Sequence record: NC_009452.1
Strand: one strand, 5' to 3'
Length of the DNA: 23,814 nucleotides
Shown: in pieces, positions 1-23,814 of the stretch
How the letters are laid out: the number at the start of each line of letters is the position of its first letter
Position numbering within the stretch: the first letter of the stretch is position 1
The notes under the pieces: generated by a model
What the model saw: only the letters and a program-made list of their open reading frames with translations
Databases searched by the model: none
What the model was told of the DNA's origin: nothing
Made by a program: the position numbers and the translations under genes

Positions 1-15
1 TCCCCCCTTGGGGGA
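1..15 (+). other. Terminal mini-hairpin TCCCCC-CTT-GGGGGA
   Basis: 1-6 is the reverse complement of 10-15. An equivalent motif sits at 23800-23814. Confidence 0.85.
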
Positions 16-127
16 GTCAGTGGAGCATTAGATTTCTATTAATTAGATTATCCCTAACTAATTATTATTTATTCTCTCTTATTATTTTTATGTCTCGCCC
101 CTTTTCTTTCGGGGCATTTCTTTTTTC

Positions 128-301
128 TCAAGTAATGTATGTGCAAATCAAGTATAAAAATCTTTCTGAACTGTTGTTGTAACCTGCTTGAGTATGTGAG
201 TGAGAGTTGATAGCGTTATTACCGTCTGTTTGTGTTGTTCTAAGGGTAGTGGAAAAAATGTAAGGTGAAGCGGTGAAGGGTTTCTGTGTAACTGTTGTCA
301 T
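128..301 (-). CDS. Possible 57-aa ITR-encoded ORF (MTTVTQKPF...), duplicated at the right end
   Basis: ATG lies 32 nt downstream of AAAAAG-CTTAAATA, the same spacing seen for ORF150 and ORF158. No recognisable domain. Confidence 0.3.
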   Translation of the reverse strand: MTTVTQKPFTASPYIFSTTLRTTQTDGNNAINSHSHTQAGYNNSSERFLYLICTYIT

Positions 302-332
302 GATTCTCTGTGAATGTATTGTGTGAAACTGG

Positions 333-346
333 TATTTAAGCTTTTT
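333..346 (-). promoter_or_regulatory. BRE/TATA-like element in ITR, facing the terminus
   Basis: AAAAAG-CTTAAATA on the - strand; same core as at 6062 and 20681. Confidence 0.5.
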
Positions 347-744
347 GGTATTTGTGTCATGAGTTGTTGTCATGTGTCTCTGGTTATAATGTGTGTGGTA
401 AAGGTTTAAAAAACTTTCGGTTTGTGAGTGGGTATTATTGTTGAGTGTTTGTGTTTGAGCTAGGTTTTGTGTTTGTGCTTGTTGTGTTATTGGATTGTTG
501 GATTGTTGTATCATTGTTTGTCTGTTTTGTTCTTATCTTACTGGGATTATTTAAAGCTTTCTGTGACCTGGAAGGTGAATAGGATTTAATAGAGAGAAAA
601 TTTGGAATGTGAAAAGTATGTATGATTTCTAGTGACGTGGGGGGTTCGGATACCGGGGTGTCCCCTCCCCCCCGGGTACCCTCTTGCCTAGCTAGCGTAG
701 TTTGTATTTTTCTAAGGGGGTATTCTGACCGGGTCTAGGGTAAA

Positions 745-996: not shown

Positions 997-1329
997 TTAG
1001 TCTGACTTGAAGTAGTCTTTGAATAAGTCACTGAAGATTTCGAATGCTTTTTGAACTGCCCACTTTGCTTGGAATACGGCAAATGGGTCATGTTCTGGAT
1101 TCATGTAGTCCAAATTATCTAAGGCGGAGTCAACATACATTAAGGCGTAGAAGATGTACATTTTCTTTTTCTCATCTGTCTCTTGTTTGTATAACTCTCT
1201 AAGTAAGGAATCTAATCCTAGTAGTCTTGATCTTAGGTTTTGTTTGAGATCAGTAGAAGTTTGTTCTAAATAACTCCAAGTTGAAGAGAACTTTTCATGG
1301 GTTTTCTCAACTATGTTTTGGGTATTCAT
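997..1329 (-). CDS. ORF110, small helical protein, paralog of ORF99
   Basis: GGTGA SD and TTTAAATA (1362-1369) upstream. 21/48 identical to ORF99 in a gapless block. Confidence 0.85.
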   Translation of the reverse strand: MNTQNIVEKTHEKFSSTWSYLEQTSTDLKQNLRSRLLGLDSLLRELYKQETDEKKKMYIFYALMYVDSALDNLDYMNPEHDPFAVFQAKWAVQKAFEIFSDLFKDYFKSD

Positions 1330-1386: not shown

Positions 1387-1686
1387 TTAAGTATAATAAA
1401 GGTTAAATCGATAAACGGCATACTTGAGTTGTTCTTTGGCGAATGGGATAAGTGTTTCAGGAATGACATAATCAATTTGATTATAAACTGAATCTACGAA
1501 TTCCAAAGCATACTTTACTTCCACTTTTCTATTAATGTCATACTCAAGTTCAAATAACTGGAGTAATAAGTTGTGTAGCTTTCGTAGTCTTATTCTCAGT
1601 TCTTCAAGAGTAAACTTGTGAGGTTTTTTTAGAAGGGAGAAGATACTAATGAATTCTTCTCTTATGGCTTTGATAAGTGATTCCAT
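1387..1686 (-). CDS. ORF99, small helical protein, paralog of ORF110
   Basis: Shares LRxRLxxL...YALxxVDS...DYxxPE with ORF110. Confidence 0.85.
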   Translation of the reverse strand: MESLIKAIREEFISIFSLLKKPHKFTLEELRIRLRKLHNLLLQLFELEYDINRKVEVKYALEFVDSVYNQIDYVIPETLIPFAKEQLKYAVYRFNLYYT

Positions 1687-1740: not shown

Positions 1741-2481
1741 TTAGCTTTCAATTTCATCATACTCATCTTCTATTGTTTCGTCAAGAATTCTTCTGGTAAT
1801 TTCTTCCTCTATTTCCTCTGGAGTTAACTTAATCTCAACTGGGGCTTTTTCTTGGTATTCGTTAATCATTTGTCTGTAAGTTGGTTCATTATTAGACTTT
1901 GGTCTTTCTTCTGGGACAACTGGGTTTTCTTCATCCATTTCTTTGATTATGGGAACTTTATAGTTATTCCTTATTCTATCTAATAGAGTGTTAATGGGTA
2001 TGCTTAAGTTGAGTTGTAATGCTTTGTCAAGTGACATGTGATAAATTCCAAGTTGTTCTCTAACGTAATCGGAAACTACGGCGTCTATTGCGATTTTAGT
2101 CAATCCCACTAGAGAACCATAATACTCAGTTAAACCGATTAAAAAGTCTCTGTTATGTCTATACTTGCGGGAGAAGACTATCCTATCAATGTAATACTGT
2201 TCGAAATGCTCAACATACACATCAGAATTCCATGTTGGCAATGGATAAATACCATCATCAGAAGTGAGATAAATCTTGTAAATTTTAGGCTGTTTGGTAA
2301 CGGCGTTTATAACAAGTTTGTTAAATTCTTCATTATCAATTGCCTTATCGGGACCTTCTTCACTGACAATTTCAAGTAAGGTTAAGAAGTTTTTGTACTC
2401 TGGGTATAACTTAAGGTATTCATCATACCATTCTTTTAATCCGTTTATTACATCACTGAACTTTGTTTCCATACAGTTCAC
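1741..2481 (-). CDS. ORF246, unknown function, acidic C-terminus (candidate terminal or virion protein)
   Basis: Long ORF directly after the polymerase. The more likely start is the ATG at 2472, because the GTG at 2481 overlaps a GGTGA SD. TATA at 2506-2513. Confidence 0.85.
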   Translation of the reverse strand: MNCMETKFSDVINGLKEWYDEYLKLYPEYKNFLTLLEIVSEEGPDKAIDNEEFNKLVINAVTKQPKIYKIYLTSDDGIYPLPTWNSDVYVEHFEQYYIDRIVFSRKYRHNRDFLIGLTEYYGSLVGLTKIAIDAVVSDYVREQLGIYHMSLDKALQLNLSIPINTLLDRIRNNYKVPIIKEMDEENPVVPEERPKSNNEPTYRQMINEYQEKAPVEIKLTPEEIEEEITRRILDETIEDEYDEIES

Positions 2482-2491
2482 CGTATAAATG

Positions 2492-4453
2492 TTATGAGAG
2501 AATACTATTTAAGTCTATTGGTTCAATTGTTTCTATGTATTTTTCCCATGTCTTTCTGTATTCTTTATGTTCTTGTTCGTCTCTGAACATGCTTCCGAAC
2601 CAGTGTACGTTGTAAGTATACCTTTGTTTAGTATTAAGTGGTGTGAAGATTTTGATCTGATTTGAAAGCATTCCCATTAACACATTGCTATCTTTTTCGG
2701 CTAAAATCTTGTATTGTTGTAAGTTTCTTATCATTATCTTTGTTGGAATTTGTACTCTAACAATTTTACCCTTGGCTAAATAGTTTCCTACGTATTCAAT
2801 AATTTTTTCGGCAATTGACTCATCAACATTGAATCCTCTTAGCTTTATCATTTTTTCTTGTGGGTCGTTCAAAATGTACTGACCATTACCAATTACAATT
2901 GCTTCTCCTACACCTTCTTGTTTTAATTGTCCTAATTGGTCTCCTACTAGTTCAGACTTTATGGGAGCTTTGCTTATTACACTGTCAGTTAAATAACTTA
3001 TAGCGTTAGGGTCTACGTTTTGGATAAAGGTTCTTCCTAAAGCGGTAATCATTGAAGCGTAAATTACATTCTGGAACTTTGCATTGAATCCTATTCTTTC
3101 GCCGAATTTCCCGTATGAACTGTTTAGAATTAACTTGTAAACTTTCTCTAGTGGGTTTTTCTCTTTCTTTAGTTGTAATCTCTTGTTGTATAGGTTATAG
3201 ATAACATCTTTGAAGATTCTATGTTTTGTTATTTTGAATTTCATTGTGTAGTATTGTCCCACTATTTTAATGTCTGGTATTAGTTCATGCTTTTCGTCTG
3301 CAAGTTCGAAATCAAAGAATGAGCCTCTGTTGTACATCATTCTGAGAAGCATCCCATTAGCTTTTGAAGCGACATACTTTCTGTCTTGTTTCAATGTGAT
3401 TTTGTAAATGTAAACATACTTTGCATCTTCATTGAATTGTGTGCCCTTAAGTAGTGGTTCTTCGTTTACTTCAAAACCTTTTTGTGTTTCAACTAATTCT
3501 AATTCTGGCAACCAACTCATCATGAATGGATACATTGAATTGACGTCATACTTGTAAACTTTTTTGAATTTACCTAATTCGTTTGAGTCGAATAACCCGC
3601 CCTTATAAAGTCTCTTTAATGTTAGCTCTATCTCAGTGTATGATCTTAATCCTTTGACAAACTCTGACTGAACTTGTGAAATAATGTAAGTTATAGCGGT
3701 TCTTGGAAGCGTGGACTTTACTTTTATTCCAAAGAGACTGTTCTTTAGAAGCGCTAATTGGTAAGTGGCAATTACATCAAGTTTGTTATACCTAGCTATT
3801 TCTTGTATTGTCTTGGGATCATTGAAATCTAATTTGTCAAAATTAGCCCTTTTTTCTTTGTCTTCCTTCCACTCTTTCATTGTTTGTTCATCAAAGACTT
3901 GAAATCCCATTTCTTGTAGTTTGGTATAATACCTACTGTAGGCTTCATACAAACTCTCACTGTAGAATTGGAGTAGGTTTATTGAGTTTATTGATCTTCC
4001 ATTATAGAGAATTTTGTAGAAGTTCTTGTATCTTTTTATTCTAAGGTTTTTAGTTGTGAAGTAGTTTTCTCCAGTGATTTTCTTTGCGAATTTTGAGTGT
4101 TTGCCTAGAAGAACATAATTAGCTAAACTTACTGGTAAATCATAATCTCCATAGAAGTATGTTTCTTCTGTTAAAAGATCAAGGGCATTTTTAACATCTT
4201 CTGGTTTTCTAATTATTACGTATTTGTATTCAGAACCATCATAAACTCCGAAAAAGATTTCTCTTCCGTTTGTCTCTATGTCGAATGCGCTAATTTGTCT
4301 TGGTTTTTCCTCTTCATTTTCCTCTAGTTTTTCATAATTGATTCTGTGTATAGTAAAGAATCCGCTTTTGATTTTGAATGAAGGGGTTAAGTCTGAAAAA
4401 TCGTTTAACTTGTATTGGATCTTATCGTTTGCGTTATTGAGGATTTGTAGCAT
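2492..4453 (-). CDS. polB: Family B DNA polymerase, protein-primed type
   Basis: ExoI AFDIET, ExoII YGDYDL, ExoIII YNKLDV, motif A YDVNSMYP, motif B KLILNSSYGKFG, ITALGR, motif C variant YLTDS. A long A-to-B insertion is compatible with TPR1. The genome is linear with ITRs. Confidence 0.93.
   Translation of the reverse strand: MLQILNNANDKIQYKLNDFSDLTPSFKIKSGFFTIHRINYEKLEENEEEKPRQISAFDIETNGREIFFGVYDGSEYKYVIIRKPEDVKNALDLLTEETYFYGDYDLPVSLANYVLLGKHSKFAKKITGENYFTTKNLRIKRYKNFYKILYNGRSINSINLLQFYSESLYEAYSRYYTKLQEMGFQVFDEQTMKEWKEDKEKRANFDKLDFNDPKTIQEIARYNKLDVIATYQLALLKNSLFGIKVKSTLPRTAITYIISQVQSEFVKGLRSYTEIELTLKRLYKGGLFDSNELGKFKKVYKYDVNSMYPFMMSWLPELELVETQKGFEVNEEPLLKGTQFNEDAKYVYIYKITLKQDRKYVASKANGMLLRMMYNRGSFFDFELADEKHELIPDIKIVGQYYTMKFKITKHRIFKDVIYNLYNKRLQLKKEKNPLEKVYKLILNSSYGKFGERIGFNAKFQNVIYASMITALGRTFIQNVDPNAISYLTDSVISKAPIKSELVGDQLGQLKQEGVGEAIVIGNGQYILNDPQEKMIKLRGFNVDESIAEKIIEYVGNYLAKGKIVRVQIPTKIMIRNLQQYKILAEKDSNVLMGMLSNQIKIFTPLNTKQRYTYNVHWFGSMFRDEQEHKEYRKTWEKYIETIEPIDLNSILS
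2506..2513 (-). promoter_or_regulatory. TATA box for ORF246, embedded in the 3' end of the polymerase gene
   Basis: CTTAAATA 34 nt upstream of the ATG at 2472. Confidence 0.45.
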
Positions 4454-4466
4454 GTGTAAAAATAGT

Positions 4467-4958
4467 CTATTTAGGTTTAAAAAGATTTTGGTCTAATCGG
4501 GAGTTTAGGTATGAGTTTAAGAGTTGTTGTCCGTAATTACTATCGCATTGAAGGGGGAATACTTTCAAGTCGCCGGTTATCATTATACATTGGTCAACTG
4601 ATACGCCTTTTCTTTCTAGAAGATAACGGTAAATGGAAGTTTGTTTTGTGGCATAAGCCAGGCTTCTGTCAGAGGATTTAATCTCTATTAAGAGTTTCTT
4701 GGAAGGTACATAAACGTCTGGTGTATAACAAATCTCTTTATTACCTATGTTGTCTCTATGGGACTGTTCTATAATAGCGTCTTTGAAAACTTGTTGAATT
4801 AGGTTCTCTATTGCTAAATGGTAAAGTTTTCCTCTAACTAACATTTCTTGTGTTGGAGGATCTCCGTAAGAGATCATGTTGGTAACGTGTACGCAATTGC
4901 TATCGAGATTGCTTGAAACAAGATTTTTGAGGGTTAATTCTAGATCTTTTATCATCAC
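4467..4958 (-). CDS. PD-(D/E)XK nuclease, Cas4/RecB-like
   Basis: RGKLYH (G...H), YTPDV (PD), IEIKS (ExK) and KQTSIY (QxxxY) appear in the expected order. No canonical Cas4 Fe-S cysteine cluster. Confidence 0.8.
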
Positions 4959-6092: not shown

Positions 6093-6563
6093 ATGATCTA
6101 CATTTTAGAAGGGCTTGATGGGACTGGAAAAACGTCTTTTGCGAGTGAATTAATTAAGTCACAAGTTTTTTCTAGACCCATGTACGTATACTTTTCAAAG
6201 GAAGACAGTTACGAGAACACAAAATTAGCATGGGTTTCTCTAATAAAAGAACTAAGTAAGCTAAACTTCAACATTATTATGGATAGGTCAATTATCTCAA
6301 CAATAGCTTATCACTTTACTTACCGCCCAAGTAAGGAGTATGAGAACTTCATAAGGAGTGAGTTAGAAAGTGTGCTTAATTTAGATCCTTCTAAGGCGGT
6401 TTTCATTCATTTTGTTAAGGTTCACGATTCAAAGAAGTTGTTGGAGTATGCTAATAGGGTGAAGAGTATAAGGGACAATTACCACTTACTCATGAGAATT
6501 TTGAGAGAAAAAGGGTTTAATGTTATTGTGAATGGGGGACAAAAAGACTTTAATCTATTTTAG
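6093..6563 (+). CDS. tmk: Thymidylate kinase-like P-loop kinase
   Basis: N-terminal ILEGLDGTGKT P-loop and IIMDRSIISTIAY (DR motif), typical of dTMP kinases. Confidence 0.88.
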   Translation: MIYILEGLDGTGKTSFASELIKSQVFSRPMYVYFSKEDSYENTKLAWVSLIKELSKLNFNIIMDRSIISTIAYHFTYRPSKEYENFIRSELESVLNLDPSKAVFIHFVKVHDSKKLLEYANRVKSIRDNYHLLMRILREKGFNVIVNGGQKDFNLF

Positions 6564-22978: not shown

Positions 22979-23380
22979 ATGTCCATGAAAGAATTCGTTC
23001 AAAAGTTAGACGAAATTCAAGCCAGTTTTTCTTCCCACTTCCCATTAGTTATCATAAACTCAAACTACAAAATAGACAATGGAATTGTTATTTTCGGTAA
23101 GAAAGGTTGGTTAAGGATTAATGAATCAGTACCGATAATGATTAACTACGGTTCACTCATTTTATTAGACACTCCAAAGAATTACATGGTAGGAGTTTAC
23201 AAAAACGTTAACGGCGGGAGAAAAATTAAATCCTATTCACCTTCCAGGTCACAGAAAGCTTTAAATAATCCCAGTAAGATAAGAACAAAACAGACAAACA
23301 ATGATACAACAATCCAACAATCCAATAACACAACAAGCACAAACACAAAACCTAGCTCAAACACAAACACTCAACAATAA
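22979..23380 (+). CDS. ORF133, hypothetical protein whose last ~51 aa are encoded by the ITR
   Basis: Alpha/beta N-terminus; crosses the ITR boundary at 23225 and ends in an N/T/Q-rich tail. Confidence 0.75.
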   Translation: MSMKEFVQKLDEIQASFSSHFPLVIINSNYKIDNGIVIFGKKGWLRINESVPIMINYGSLILLDTPKNYMVGVYKNVNGGRKIKSYSPSRSQKALNNPSKIRTKQTNNDTTIQQSNNTTSTNTKPSSNTNTQQ

Positions 23381-23513
23381 TACCCACTCACAAACCGAAA
23401 GTTTTTTAAACCTTTACCACACACATTATAACCAGAGACACATGACAACAACTCATGACACAAATACCAAAAAGCTTAAATACCAGTTTCACACAATACA
23501 TTCACAGAGAATC

Positions 23514-23687
23514 ATGACAACAGTTACACAGAAACCCTTCACCGCTTCACCTTACATTTTTTCCACTACCCTTAGAACAACACAAACAGACGGTAATAAC
23601 GCTATCAACTCTCACTCACATACTCAAGCAGGTTACAACAACAGTTCAGAAAGATTTTTATACTTGATTTGCACATACATTACTTGA
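23514..23687 (+). CDS. Possible 57-aa ITR-encoded ORF (right copy)
   Basis: AAAAAG-CTTAAATA at 23469-23482, 32 nt upstream. A GCCCC/GGGGC stem follows the stop. Confidence 0.3.
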   Translation: MTTVTQKPFTASPYIFSTTLRTTQTDGNNAINSHSHTQAGYNNSSERFLYLICTYIT

Positions 23688-23799
23688 GAAAAAAGAAATG
23701 CCCCGAAAGAAAAGGGGCGAGACATAAAAATAATAAGAGAGAATAAATAATAATTAGTTAGGGATAATCTAATTAATAGAAATCTAATGCTCTACTGTC

Positions 23800-23814
23800 T
23801 CCCCCTTGGGGGGA
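23800..23814 (+). other. Terminal mini-hairpin TCCCCC-TTG-GGGGGA
   Basis: Self-complementary. The loop reads TT on the same strand as at the left end. Confidence 0.85.

What the first reader, a model, noticed from the sequence alone, without database searches (positions are those of the whole stretch)
2981..3143. Polymerase with a degenerate motif C and almost no room for TPR2
Seen: motif C reads SYLTDS instead of YxDTDS (first Asp replaced by Leu), the KxY motif appears as GNGQY, and only 18 aa separate YGKF from ITALGR. Established: in phi29 polymerase this interval holds the TPR2 insertion, roughly twice this length, which is needed for processivity and strand displacement; the second Asp of DTD is the key metal ligand. 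Inference: the enzyme is probably active but may need an accessory factor or use a non-phi29 elongation mode. No helicase or clamp is recognisable in the genome.
Basis: partly seen in the sequence, partly recalled or inferred. Interest (0 to 1): 0.6.

Follow-up and report, generated by a model that had tools for sequence, protein, structure and literature searches.

The report
Bottle-virus DNA polymerase lacking TPR2
The DNA-copying enzyme of the archaeal bottle-shaped virus ABV is a known, probably active relative of the phage phi29 polymerase, but it lacks the built-in clamp-and-wedge loop (TPR2) that lets phi29 copy DNA alone, and modelling suggests it works with the protein encoded by the gene next to it.

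Summary
The window is the complete genome of Acidianus bottle-shaped virus (EF432053). The finding lies in ORF653, the annotated putative protein-primed family B polymerase.

- Motif C reads YLTDS.
- The KxY site reads GNGQY.
- Only 18 residues separate YGKF from ITALGR, against 39 in phi29.

None of this is decay. All 34 ampullavirus-type relatives keep the xLTDS motif C (YLTDS in 32), GxY (GNGxY in 33) and the short spacing. The exonuclease motifs, motifs A and B and the second Asp are also conserved. The motif C variant in archaeal enzymes of this type is already in the literature, and enzymes without the first Asp are active.

The absence of TPR2 is real. The AlphaFold model shows helix, short loop, helix and no hairpin. 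The spacing is even shorter than in clamp-dependent T4 gp43. I found no paper in the held library that says this.

The three traits also occur together in actinophage tectivirus polymerases and in a metagenomic family of more than 1000 proteins.

No helicase or clamp was found. The conserved downstream gene ORF246 encodes an acidic, all-helical protein. It is predicted to bind the polymerase (ipSAE 0.73, best control 0.00), touching the exonuclease domain and the thumb. It is most likely the terminal protein or an accessory subunit.

Verdict: a known enzyme with a new architectural variant, of moderate interest.

The parts
2492..4453 (-). ORF653, a family B DNA polymerase of the protein-primed type (P0001, 653 aa)
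   Evidence: 100% identical to EF432053 ORF653. PF03175 scores 60.1 bits against a cut-off of 25.8. The best solved match is the phi29 polymerase, Z 21.6, rmsd 4.1 over 476 residues.
4265..4285 (-). ExoI motif FDIETNG (residues 57-63). ExoII YGDYD is at nt 4139-4153 and ExoIII YNKLD at nt 3776-3790.
   Evidence: Positions. D58, E60, D105 and D226 are conserved in at least 90% of the alignment, and Y222 is invariant.
3527..3547 (-). Motif A DVNSMYP (residues 303-309), which carries the catalytic Asp303
   Evidence: D303, N305, S306, Y308 and P309 are invariant in 35 sequences.
3224..3526 (-). Beta-rich insertion between motif A and the fingers (about residues 310-410), in the position of phi29 TPR1
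   Evidence: The model has strands at 317-325, 346-356, 363-380 and 395-410 with high pLDDT. The whole model aligns to phi29 residues 3-575. The superposition itself could not be inspected.
3104..3136 (-). Motif B, K440 to F450 (KLILNSSYGKF)
   Evidence: K440, N444, Y447, G448 and K449 are invariant.
3050..3103 (-). Fingers-to-palm connection, residues 451-468. This is the site where TPR2 would be; here it is only 18 aa.
   Evidence: It is 18-19 aa in all ampullavirus-type polymerases. The model shows a short helix at 450-453, a loop at 454-458 (pLDDT under 50), then a helix at 459-480, with no hairpin.
2981..2998 (-). Motif C variant SYLTDS (residues 486-491). Leu488 replaces the first Asp. 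Asp490 is the metal ligand.
   Evidence: T489 and D490 are invariant. Y487, L488 and S491 are conserved in at least 90%.
2876..2890 (-). GNGQY (residues 522-526) in place of the KxY motif
   Evidence: G524 and Y526 are invariant, and N523 is conserved in at least 90%. It aligns with phi29 KTY. K537, aligned with phi29 K529, is kept.
2495..2641 (-). C-terminal extension (residues 605-653) beyond the end of the phi29 thumb. It has two strands and two helices and ends in a conserved IEPIDL tail.
   Evidence: The structural alignment to phi29 ends at model residue 604, which matches phi29 residue 575. pLDDT here is 90-95.
4304..4453 (-). N-terminal extension (residues 1-50). It is disordered in the model of the polymerase alone.
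   Evidence: pLDDT is under 50 for residues 1-50. Residues 1-33 lie in the predicted interface with ORF246.
1741..2481 (-). ORF246 (ATG at 2472; P0037, 243 aa). It is an acidic, all-helical protein encoded directly downstream of the polymerase gene, and is the candidate terminal protein or polymerase partner.
   Evidence: The gene keeps this position in ABV2, ABV3 and six metagenomic ampullavirus contigs. The family alignment is A2. The model is all-alpha with pLDDT 81.6. The complex with the polymerase scores ipSAE 0.73 against 0.00 for the best control.
1..590 (.). Left inverted terminal repeat. Its partner is at 23225-23814.
   Evidence: The arms are 590 nt long and 99% complementary.

Best explanation
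ORF653 is the replicative family B DNA polymerase of Acidianus bottle-shaped virus. It belongs to the protein-primed lineage that includes phi29 and PRD1.

It most likely has both catalytic activities:
- Polymerase: Asp303 of motif A and Asp490 of motif C bind the two metals, and motif B binds the dNTP.
- Proofreading: the three exonuclease motifs are intact.

Leu in place of the first Asp of DTD, and Gly in place of the Lys of KxY, are fixed signatures of its clade. They are not damage.

The enzyme lacks the TPR2 hairpin. The fingers helix runs into the palm helix through 18 residues, a connection as short as in clamp-dependent polymerases. It therefore cannot close the phi29-type ring around the product duplex. 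It also cannot form the narrow template tunnel that acts as a wedge.

Inferred: the enzyme works as a heterodimer with the product of the adjacent gene ORF246. This acidic helical protein is predicted to clamp onto the polymerase's N-terminal tail, the exonuclease-domain loops and the thumb. ORF246 is most likely the terminal protein that primes synthesis at the 590-bp inverted terminal repeats. It may in addition, or instead, supply in trans the bridge between thumb and exonuclease domain that TPR2 supplies in cis.

Shown here: the identity of the gene, the motif pattern and its conservation, the missing insertion, and the conserved gene order.

Inferred only: catalytic activity, protein priming, and the role of ORF246.

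The confidence of 0.65 is for the whole statement. I put about 0.9 on an active enzyme of this type without TPR2, about 0.6 on ORF246 being a true partner, and about 0.5 on ORF246 being the terminal protein.
For: Identity and fold:
- The window is 100% identical to EF432053.
- PF03175 scores above its cut-off.
- phi29 polymerase is the best solved match (Z 21.6), well above the RNA-primed family B enzymes (Z 13 or less).

Conservation across 35 sequences, down to 21% identity:
- D303, K440, N444, Y447, T489, D490 and Y526 are invariant.
- The exonuclease residues are conserved in at least 90%.
- xLTDS, GxY and the 18-19 aa interval are present in all 34 ampullavirus-type relatives; YLTDS in 32 and GNGxY in 33.

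The first Asp is dispensable:
- piPolB, with SxTTDG, is an active polymerase.
- Mavirus, mitochondrial plasmid and some archaeal enzymes also lack it (PMC5695915; PMC11161782).

No TPR2:
- The model (pLDDT 83, pTM 0.81) has helix 436-446, helix 450-453, loop 454-458 and helix 459-480.
- The Tyr(B)-to-Asp(C) distance is 43, against 68-95 in canonical protein-primed enzymes and 56 in T4 gp43.

Role of TPR2 in phi29 and in the Entamoeba enzyme:
- PMC2615600, PMC4974454 and PMC3511435 describe it.
- The Entamoeba TPR2 deletion mutant is distributive.

Partner ORF246:
- A 237-259 aa gene follows the polymerase gene in every ampullavirus contig examined, including one whose polymerase is only 42% identical.
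- The family is acidic (pI 4.6-5.5), with the charge concentrated in the C-terminal third. It has an almost invariant tail ending ..YDEIES. Tyr86 and Ser243 are invariant, position 217 is Thr or Ser, and Tyr238 is nearly invariant.
- The complex model scores ipSAE 0.73 (three runs, 0.72-0.79), with a best control of 0.00. The tool's calibration is 58 of 80 solved complexes against 2 of 110 mismatched pairs. The tool warns that these counts hold only roughly, because my own alignments were used. The runs share at least 84% of contacts, and the partner's pLDDT is at least 81.
- The interface uses the polymerase N-terminus, the loop after ExoII and the thumb. By rough alignment, the last two fall in the regions where phi29 contacts the priming domain of its terminal protein (R96; K557 and K575; PMC4974454).

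Genome:
- No helicase or clamp among the 20 largest other ORFs.
Against: No biochemistry exists for this enzyme or any close relative. PMC5695915 says none of the archaeal variants had been characterised.

The complex is a model only:
- Its interface contains no residue of the TPR1-like region (310-410), where phi29 binds the intermediate domain of its terminal protein.
- It contains no active-site residue.
- The acidic tail of ORF246 is not placed with confidence.
- Nothing therefore shows a priming residue reaching the active site.

Other weaknesses:
- ORF246 has no detectable fold relative, including the phi29 terminal protein.
- I could not inspect 3D coordinates. Whether the long thumb or the C-terminal extension closes a ring on its own is untested.
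- The alignment for ORF246 has only 10 rows.
Confidence: 0.65

Rival explanations
1. The polymerase is self-sufficient. Its thumb is more than twice as long as in phi29, and a folded 50-residue C-terminal extension follows it. Perhaps with the TPR1-like insertion, these close around the DNA and replace TPR2, so no partner is needed for processivity or strand displacement.
For: From Asp490 to the C-terminus is 163 residues, against 117 in phi29. The structural alignment to phi29 ends at residue 604, and residues 605-653 are modelled with pLDDT 90-95. Conserved basic and aromatic residues in this part (K601, K609, Y612) suggest DNA contact.
Against: Long C-terminal parts are not specific to the TPR2-less enzymes. 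Bam35 and His1 also have them. Nothing shows that the extension reaches across the cleft. In the complex model, thumb residues 578-593 touch ORF246.
Confidence: 0.2
2. Elongation relies on host factors: the Acidianus PCNA ring for processivity and the host MCM or single-strand-binding protein for unwinding. This is how RNA-primed family B polymerases work.
For: The fingers-to-palm connection is as short as in clamp-dependent T4 gp43. The virus encodes no recognisable helicase or clamp. The C-terminal tail IEPIDL.. is conserved, as partner-binding tails often are.
Against: No canonical PIP box (Qxx[LIMV]xx followed by two aromatic residues) occurs in any of the 12 polymerases of this group that were scanned. 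The C-terminal tail is modelled as packed onto the body of the protein. Mesophilic tectivirus-like phages of bacteria carry the same short-connection polymerase type, so a dependence specific to archaeal PCNA cannot be the general answer.
Confidence: 0.12
3. ORF246 is not the primer. It is a stable accessory subunit, a processivity or strand-separation factor that bridges the thumb and the exonuclease domain where TPR2 would sit. The terminal protein would be another ORF.
For: The predicted interface joins the exonuclease-domain loops (63-66, 81-85, 111-135) and the thumb (578-593). It misses the TPR1-like region and the active site. Acidic C-terminal tails are typical of single-strand-binding and accessory proteins that dock on polymerases; this last point rests on my own knowledge.
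Against: The gene's position, its size (243 aa, against 259 for PRD1 and 245 for Bam35), its all-helical fold, its acidic C-terminal third and its conserved hydroxyl residues all fit a terminal protein equally well. A protein sitting in the duplex-exit cleft would block DNA unless it moves.
Confidence: 0.2
4. The enzyme starts DNA chains without a protein primer, as primer-independent piPolB does. The altered motif C and KxY would reflect that.
For: piPolB also lacks the first Asp (TTD) and the KxY motif (KTRG).
Against: The piPolB signature KH-X8-KTRG is absent. ABV has GNGxY, with no Lys or Arg at those positions. piPolBs retain TPR2. The genome is linear with long inverted terminal repeats.
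Confidence: 0.05
5. The polymerase domain is catalytically dead, or the gene is decaying.
For: There are two departures from canonical motifs, at DTD and at KxY.
Against: The same residues are fixed in 34 relatives over deep divergence. All other catalytic residues are invariant, and the frame is open. Enzymes lacking the first Asp are active.
Confidence: 0.03

Closest known systems
Bacillus phage phi29 DNA polymerase (PDB 2PYJ, 1XHX, 2EX3)
   Same: It is the best structural match, Z 21.6 over 476 residues. It shares the exonuclease motifs, motifs A and B, the catalytic second Asp, an insertion at the TPR1 position and the Lys529 equivalent (K537). Its polymerase gene also lies in an end-proximal gene cluster of a linear genome.
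   Different: phi29 has DTD and KxY. It has a 39-residue fingers-to-palm interval that contains the TPR2 hairpin; ABV has LTD, GxY and 18 residues. ABV adds 46-50 residues at each end. The phi29 terminal-protein gene lies upstream of the polymerase gene, whereas ORF246 lies downstream.
Polymerases of actinophage tectiviruses (Rhodococcus phages Toil and P19, Streptomyces phages Forthebois and WheeHeim) and their metagenomic kin (the P0036 family)
   Same: These are the nearest non-ampullavirus relatives by tblastn. They share a short motif B-to-C spacing (49-57), loss of the first Asp (ETDG, ATDG, ETDA) and GxY. In a quick tree they fall on the same side of a branch as the ampullavirus clade, with SH-aLRT support of 86. 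They come from small linear genomes without a recognised helicase.
   Different: Their hosts are bacteria, and their virions are PRD1-like icosahedral particles with a membrane. The connection is 6-10 residues longer in most of them, enough for a mini-loop. No ORF246 homologue was seen.
His1 (Salterprovirus) polymerase
   Same: It comes from an archaeal virus. It has ATD in motif C and GxY, and it groups with the xTD side of the tree.
   Different: It has a long insertion after motif B, with a spacing of 88.
Primer-independent PolB (piPolB) of pipolins
   Same: It falls in the same cluster of protein-primed and primer-independent PolBs (PMC7544198). The first Asp of motif C is replaced, and the enzyme is active.
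   Different: piPolB has KTRG with an upstream KH, and it keeps both TPR1 and TPR2.
RNA-primed family B polymerases such as T4 gp43
   Same: The fingers-to-palm connection is minimal, with 15 residues between YGAL and ITIFGQ. These enzymes depend on a separate clamp.
   Different: The overall fold match is weaker, with Z 13 or less for archaeal and eukaryotic enzymes of this kind. PF00136 finds nothing in the ABV genome. They have DTD and KxY.

Membership tests
[quoted passage not shown] | Match to the family profile above the curated cut-off | tested here: met
   60.1 bits against a cut-off of 25.8, E 2.5e-16. All homologues carry PF03175.
[quoted passage not shown] | 3'-5' exonuclease motifs ExoI (DxE), ExoII and ExoIII (Yx3D) | tested here: met
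   The motifs are FDIETNG, YGDYD and YNKLD. They are conserved in at least 90% of the family.
[quoted passage not shown] | Polymerase motifs A (DxxSLYP) and B (Kx3NSxYG) | tested here: met
   DVNSMYP at 303-309 and KLILNSSYG at 440-448, with invariant key residues.
[quoted passage not shown] | Motif C YxDTDS with both Asp residues | tested here: not met
   The motif is YLTDS. The first Asp is Leu in all 34 ampullavirus-type relatives, and the second Asp is invariant. Active family members without the first Asp are known.
[quoted passage not shown] | KxY motif | tested here: not met
   The site reads GNGQY. Gly524 and Tyr526 are invariant.
[quoted passage not shown] | TPR1 insertion between motif A and the fingers | tested here: inconclusive
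   A beta-rich segment of about 100 residues (317-410) lies at the right place, and the model aligns globally to phi29. I could not inspect the superposition. No TPR1-region residue appears in the predicted ORF246 interface.
[quoted passage not shown] | TPR2 insertion (beta-hairpin) between the fingers and the palm | tested here: not met
   The interval is 18 residues, against 39 in phi29. The model has no hairpin. The Tyr(B)-to-Asp(C) spacing is 43, against 68-95 in canonical members.
[quoted passage not shown] | Linear genome with inverted terminal repeats and a covalently bound terminal protein | not testable with these tools
   The 590-bp inverted terminal repeats are confirmed. Covalent attachment of a protein cannot be tested here. 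ORF246 is only a candidate.
Primer-independent PolB (piPolB) | KH-X8-KTRG motif in place of KxY, with SxTTDG as motif C | tested here: not met
   ABV has GNGQY and SYLTDS. The motif definition comes from PMC5695915.
RNA/DNA-primed family B polymerase (Pfam PF00136) | Match to the PF00136 profile | tested here: not met
   No match anywhere in the 23.8-kb genome, while 5 control genomes matched.
Sliding clamp (PCNA), tested as a candidate identity for ORF246 | Beta-rich PCNA fold or a Pfam PCNA match | tested here: not met
   ORF246 has no Pfam hit. Its model is all-alpha and has no PDB match at E <= 0.001.

The most novel reading that the evidence does not exclude
The ampullavirus replicase may be a two-subunit machine. 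A polymerase of the protein-primed lineage that never had, or has lost, TPR2 would be completed in trans by the product of the adjacent gene ORF246. That protein would bridge the exonuclease domain and the thumb. It would serve as primer, as the missing arch, or as both.

More broadly, polymerases with xTD, GxY and a short connection would form a large, old branch of the protein-primed family. This branch includes ampullaviruses, actinophage tectiviruses and more than 1000 metagenomic relatives. If so, TPR2 is not a universal hallmark of protein-primed replication, and phi29-style intrinsic processivity is only one of several solutions.
Probability: 0.3. Interest if true: 0.7.

Novelty: new variant of a known kind. 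Interest (0 to 1): 0.52.

Why it matters
Reviews and comparative papers treat TPR1 and TPR2 as the signature of protein-primed polymerases. They use TPR2 to explain why these viruses need no helicase or clamp.

A whole branch of such polymerases lacks TPR2, and the small linear viruses that carry them still encode no helicase. This means the textbook explanation does not cover these viruses.

The finding makes a concrete question testable with two small genes: how does a TPR2-less enzyme of this type achieve processive, strand-displacing replication at about 80 C?

It also has a practical side. If the ORF653-ORF246 pair is processive, it would be a route to the thermostable phi29-like amplification enzyme that has long been sought.

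The motif C part of the finding adds nothing new.

Tried and rejected
- **Sequence search of the polymerase against solved structures:** no hit at E <= 10. The link to phi29 needed a fold search.
- **The original genome paper** (Peng 2007, PMID 17412384) and **the phi29 TPR2-deletion paper** (PMC1088371) are not held. I therefore could not check what Peng et al. wrote about TPR2. The deletion result is cited through later papers.
- **'ORF246 or ORF247 is a hidden PCNA'**, an idea prompted by their PCNA-like lengths: rejected for ORF246, which has an all-alpha model and no fold match. ORF247 was scanned by Pfam and PHROGs only.
- **'ORF156 is a helicase':** it is a 156-aa P-loop protein of the thymidylate-kinase type. 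Its VapE-like match covers only residues 2-58, its N-terminal P-loop end. It is too small for a helicase.
- **PIP-box search:** no canonical motif.
- **ESM Atlas look-up of ORF246:** only chance-level rows.
- **'The 830-aa relative P0035 carries a fused ORF246':** a profile of the ORF246 family finds nothing in it.
- **Thermal melting as a substitute for the wedge:** considered, but weakened because phages of mesophilic actinobacteria carry the same polymerase type.
- **PF00136 search of the genome:** nothing found, and it gave no control loci. T4 gp43 was fetched instead.
- **The large profile search** (search of protein representatives) was not used, because the word searches answered the question.
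Full report
**What the window is.** The 23,814-base window is 100% identical to the complete genome of Acidianus bottle-shaped virus (ABV; EF432053 / NC_009452). It has 590-nt inverted terminal repeats. The finding lies in the ORF at 2492..4453 on the minus strand. This ORF encodes the 653-residue ORF653, annotated as a putative protein-primed DNA polymerase. It matches Pfam PF03175 at 60.1 bits, against a cut-off of 25.8.

**The observation.** All the sequence statements are right.
- YGKF is residues 447-450 (nt 3104-3115).
- ITALGR is residues 469-474 (nt 3032-3049).
- SYLTDS is residues 486-491 (nt 2981-2998).
- GNGQY is residues 522-526 (nt 2876-2890), just outside the stated span.
- Eighteen residues separate YGKF from ITALGR. 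phi29 has 39 in the same interval.

The other catalytic motifs are canonical:
- ExoI FDIETNG
- ExoII YGDYD
- ExoIII YNKLD
- motif A DVNSMYP
- motif B KLILNSSYG

**This is conserved, not degenerate.** A word search found 34 ampullavirus-type relatives, including ABV2, ABV3 and many hot-spring metagenome contigs. Their identity to ABV ranges from 85% down to 28%. One more distant protein, P0036, was also found.
- D303, K440, N444, Y447, G448, T489, D490, G524 and Y526 are invariant in the alignment.
- The exonuclease residues D58, E60, D105 and D226 are conserved in at least 90%.
- Every ampullavirus-type sequence reads xLTDS (YLTDS in 32) and GxY (GNGxY in 33), and has an 18-19 residue interval.
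- K537 aligns with phi29 K529, a primer-terminus ligand, and is kept. The adjacent R539 is invariant.

This pattern is what purifying selection on a working enzyme produces.

**What is already known.**
- PMC5695915 states that some archaeal protein-primed polymerases vary in motif C, citing Peng 2007 (the ABV genome paper) among others. It adds that none of them had been characterised.
- The same paper shows that piPolB, with SxTTDG, is a proficient polymerase. Only the second carboxylate is therefore needed.
- PMC11161782 lists mavirus, mitochondrial plasmids, pipolins and certain archaeal polymerases as active enzymes that lack this Asp.

The motif C part of the finding is therefore known and unsurprising. 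I could not read Peng 2007 itself.

**TPR2 is missing.** The AlphaFold2 model was built on the 35-sequence alignment (mean pLDDT 83, pTM 0.81). Its elements around the site are:
- the motif B helix at 436-446
- a one-turn helix at 450-453
- a five-residue low-confidence loop at 454-458
- the palm helix at 459-480

There is no beta-hairpin.

The phi29 polymerase is the best solved match, with Foldseek E 2e-16. The second aligner gives Z 21.6 and rmsd 4.1 A over 476 residues, matching model residues 49-604 to phi29 residues 3-575. RNA-primed family B enzymes reach Z 13 at most.

The distance from the motif B Tyr to the catalytic Asp of motif C compares as follows:

| Polymerase | Distance (residues) |
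|---|---|
| 35 ampullavirus-type sequences | 43-45 |
| phi29 | 68 |
| PRD1 | 83 |
| Bam35 | 89 |
| His1 | 88 |
| 14 measurable canonical DTDS polymerases from IMG/VR | 76-95 |
| T4 gp43 (clamp-dependent) | 56 |

The ABV connection is as short as, or shorter than, that of a polymerase that needs a separate clamp.

In phi29, TPR2 together with the thumb closes the ring around the duplex. It also forms the narrow template tunnel that acts as a wedge (PMC2615600; PMC4974454). Deleting TPR2 from the Entamoeba enzyme makes it distributive (PMC3511435).

Comparative papers call TPR1 and TPR2 the signature of the group. They use TPR2 to explain why these viruses need no helicase. I found no paper in the held library that says the ABV enzyme lacks TPR2.

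**The traits mark a larger clade.**
- The nearest relatives outside the ampullaviruses are the polymerases of the actinophage tectiviruses P19, Toil, Forthebois and WheeHeim.
- Three of them (P19, Toil and Forthebois) were fetched and aligned. They have spacings of 49-53, motif C reading VETDG or VATDG, and GxY.
- The papers describing these phages do not mention TPR regions.
- The distant hit P0036 belongs to a family of at least 1068 proteins. Of the 118 listed members that could be measured, 117 read ETDA and all of those have a spacing of 55-57. GxY was found in 107.
- The contigs of this family are at most about 17 kb. One carries a PRD1 DNA-delivery domain, so it is tectivirus-like.
- His1 has ATD and GxY but a long insertion.

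I built a quick maximum-likelihood tree from which the insertion columns had been dropped.
- The canonical DTD polymerases fall on one side of a branch (SH-aLRT 93).
- The ampullavirus clade (99) sits on the other side, together with His1 plus the tectivirus-like clade (97). That side has support of 86.
- The T4 outgroup is on a very long branch, so the root, and therefore whether TPR2 was gained or lost, is unsettled.

**Accessory factors.** Pfam scans of the 20 largest other ORFs, and PHROGs scans of 10 of them, found no helicase, clamp or OB-fold single-strand-binding protein.
- ORF156 is a thymidylate-kinase-like P-loop protein.
- ORF163 has weak Cas4-like hits.
- ORF315 is a glycosyltransferase.

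This agrees with the ICTV profile of the family. None of the 12 family polymerases scanned, ABV's included, has a canonical PIP box.

**A candidate partner, ORF246.** The gene directly downstream of the polymerase gene is ORF246 (1741-2481, minus strand; 243 aa from its ATG).
- A gene of 237-259 aa follows the polymerase gene in ABV2, ABV3 and six metagenomic contigs. One of these contigs has a polymerase only 42% identical to ABV's.
- These genes form one fast-evolving family, 21-31% identical to ABV beyond its closest relatives.
- The proteins are acidic (pI 4.6-5.5). The negative charge sits in the C-terminal third, and the tail is almost invariant, ending ..YDEIES.
- Tyr86 and Ser243 are invariant, position 217 is Thr or Ser, and Tyr238 is nearly invariant.
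- The model is all-helical, with pLDDT 81.6 and pTM 0.80. It has no PDB fold match. It is therefore not a PCNA-like clamp and not an OB-fold protein.

The complex prediction of the polymerase with ORF246 passed.
- The ipSAE is 0.73 (median of three runs; 0.72, 0.73 and 0.79). The best of three controls scored 0.00.
- In the tool's calibration, 58 of 80 solved complexes and 2 of 110 mismatched pairs reached the mark. The tool notes that these counts hold only roughly when one's own alignments are used.
- The runs share at least 84% of their contacts, and the partner's pLDDT is at least 81.
- On the polymerase, the interface comprises residues 1-33 (disordered when the polymerase is modelled alone), 63-66, 81-85, 111-135, 273-280 and thumb residues 578-593.
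- The near-invariant ORF246 residues D84, E116 and K126 lie in the interface, and invariant Y86 adjoins it.
- By rough alignment, polymerase residues 111-135 correspond to phi29 residues 73-93, next to R96. In phi29, R96 and the thumb lysines contact the DNA-mimicking priming domain of the terminal protein (PMC4974454).
- The interface contains no residue of the TPR1-like region and none of the active site. The acidic tail is not placed with confidence.

The model supports binding. It does not show priming.

**How it most likely works.**
- Shown: the enzyme's identity, its conserved catalytic set, the missing TPR2, the conserved pairing of the polymerase gene with ORF246, and a passing complex model.
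- Inferred: the enzyme is active. It starts at the inverted terminal repeats from a protein primer, which is most likely ORF246 (about 50%). Without the cis clamp and wedge, it depends on a partner for processive, strand-displacing synthesis.
- I put about 60% on ORF246 being a true partner of the polymerase. Roughly half of the total goes to the terminal-protein role, and about 20% to an accessory role only.

The rivals are a self-sufficient enzyme that uses its long thumb and 50-residue C-terminal extension (0.2), host PCNA or MCM (0.12), primer-independent initiation (0.05) and an inactive enzyme (0.03).

**Verdict.** The motif C point is already known. The lack of TPR2, its spread across a large clade, and the predicted ORF653-ORF246 pair are new as far as the held literature shows. 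All of it awaits biochemistry.

Noticed in passing
window 1741-2481 (-); also L028:7981-8724, L029:7978-8703, L030:7993-8706, L031:6061-6786, L033:5993-6706, L034:5980-6720, L011:11883-12662: A fast-evolving family of 237-259 aa acidic helical proteins always follows the polymerase gene. Its tail is almost invariant, ending ..(D/E)YDEIES. It has no annotation and no fold relative.
   Followed up: yes
L007:1898-3655, L008:1844-3634, L009:1595-3697; proteins P0036 and P0040-P0158; L036: Actinophage tectivirus polymerases, and a metagenomic family of at least 1068 proteins, share ETD or ATD in motif C, GxY and a short motif B-to-C spacing (49-57). The family's contigs are at most 17 kb, and one carries a PRD1 DNA-delivery domain. 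In a quick tree these polymerases group with the ampullavirus enzymes and His1, apart from the canonical DTD polymerases.
   Followed up: partly
L032:4001-6493 (P0035, 830 aa): The most distant YLTDS polymerase has about 136 extra C-terminal residues that end in a long acidic tail. No ORF246-like gene lies downstream; a thymidylate-kinase-like gene follows instead. A profile of the ORF246 family does not match the extension, so a fusion is not shown.
   Followed up: partly
window 2495-2560 (-), polymerase residues about 632-653: The polymerases end in a conserved helix followed by the tail IEPIDL(K/N)(T/S)(V/I)(L/I). This tail is not a canonical PIP box, and its role is unknown.
   Followed up: partly
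window 6093-6563 (+), ORF156: This P-loop protein is annotated as thymidylate kinase (PF02223 35 bits; phrog_761). Its N-terminal P-loop end (residues 2-58) also passes the cut-off of the VapE-like domain (27.6 bits against 25). Homologues lie near the polymerase gene in several relatives.
   Followed up: no
window 4467-4958 (-), ORF163: The gene directly upstream of the polymerase gene has only weak, sub-threshold Cas4, TnsA-like and DUF7487 hits. A gene of 173-180 aa keeps this position in the relatives.
   Followed up: no
window 2492-3880 (-), the annotated internal ORF462: GenBank annotates an internal start at Met192 of the polymerase. That product would lack ExoI and ExoII. Whether it is made is unknown.
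   Followed up: no
window 997-1329 and 1387-1686 (-): ORF110 and ORF99 both match the same PHROG (phrog_16101), so they are tandem paralogues.
   Followed up: no
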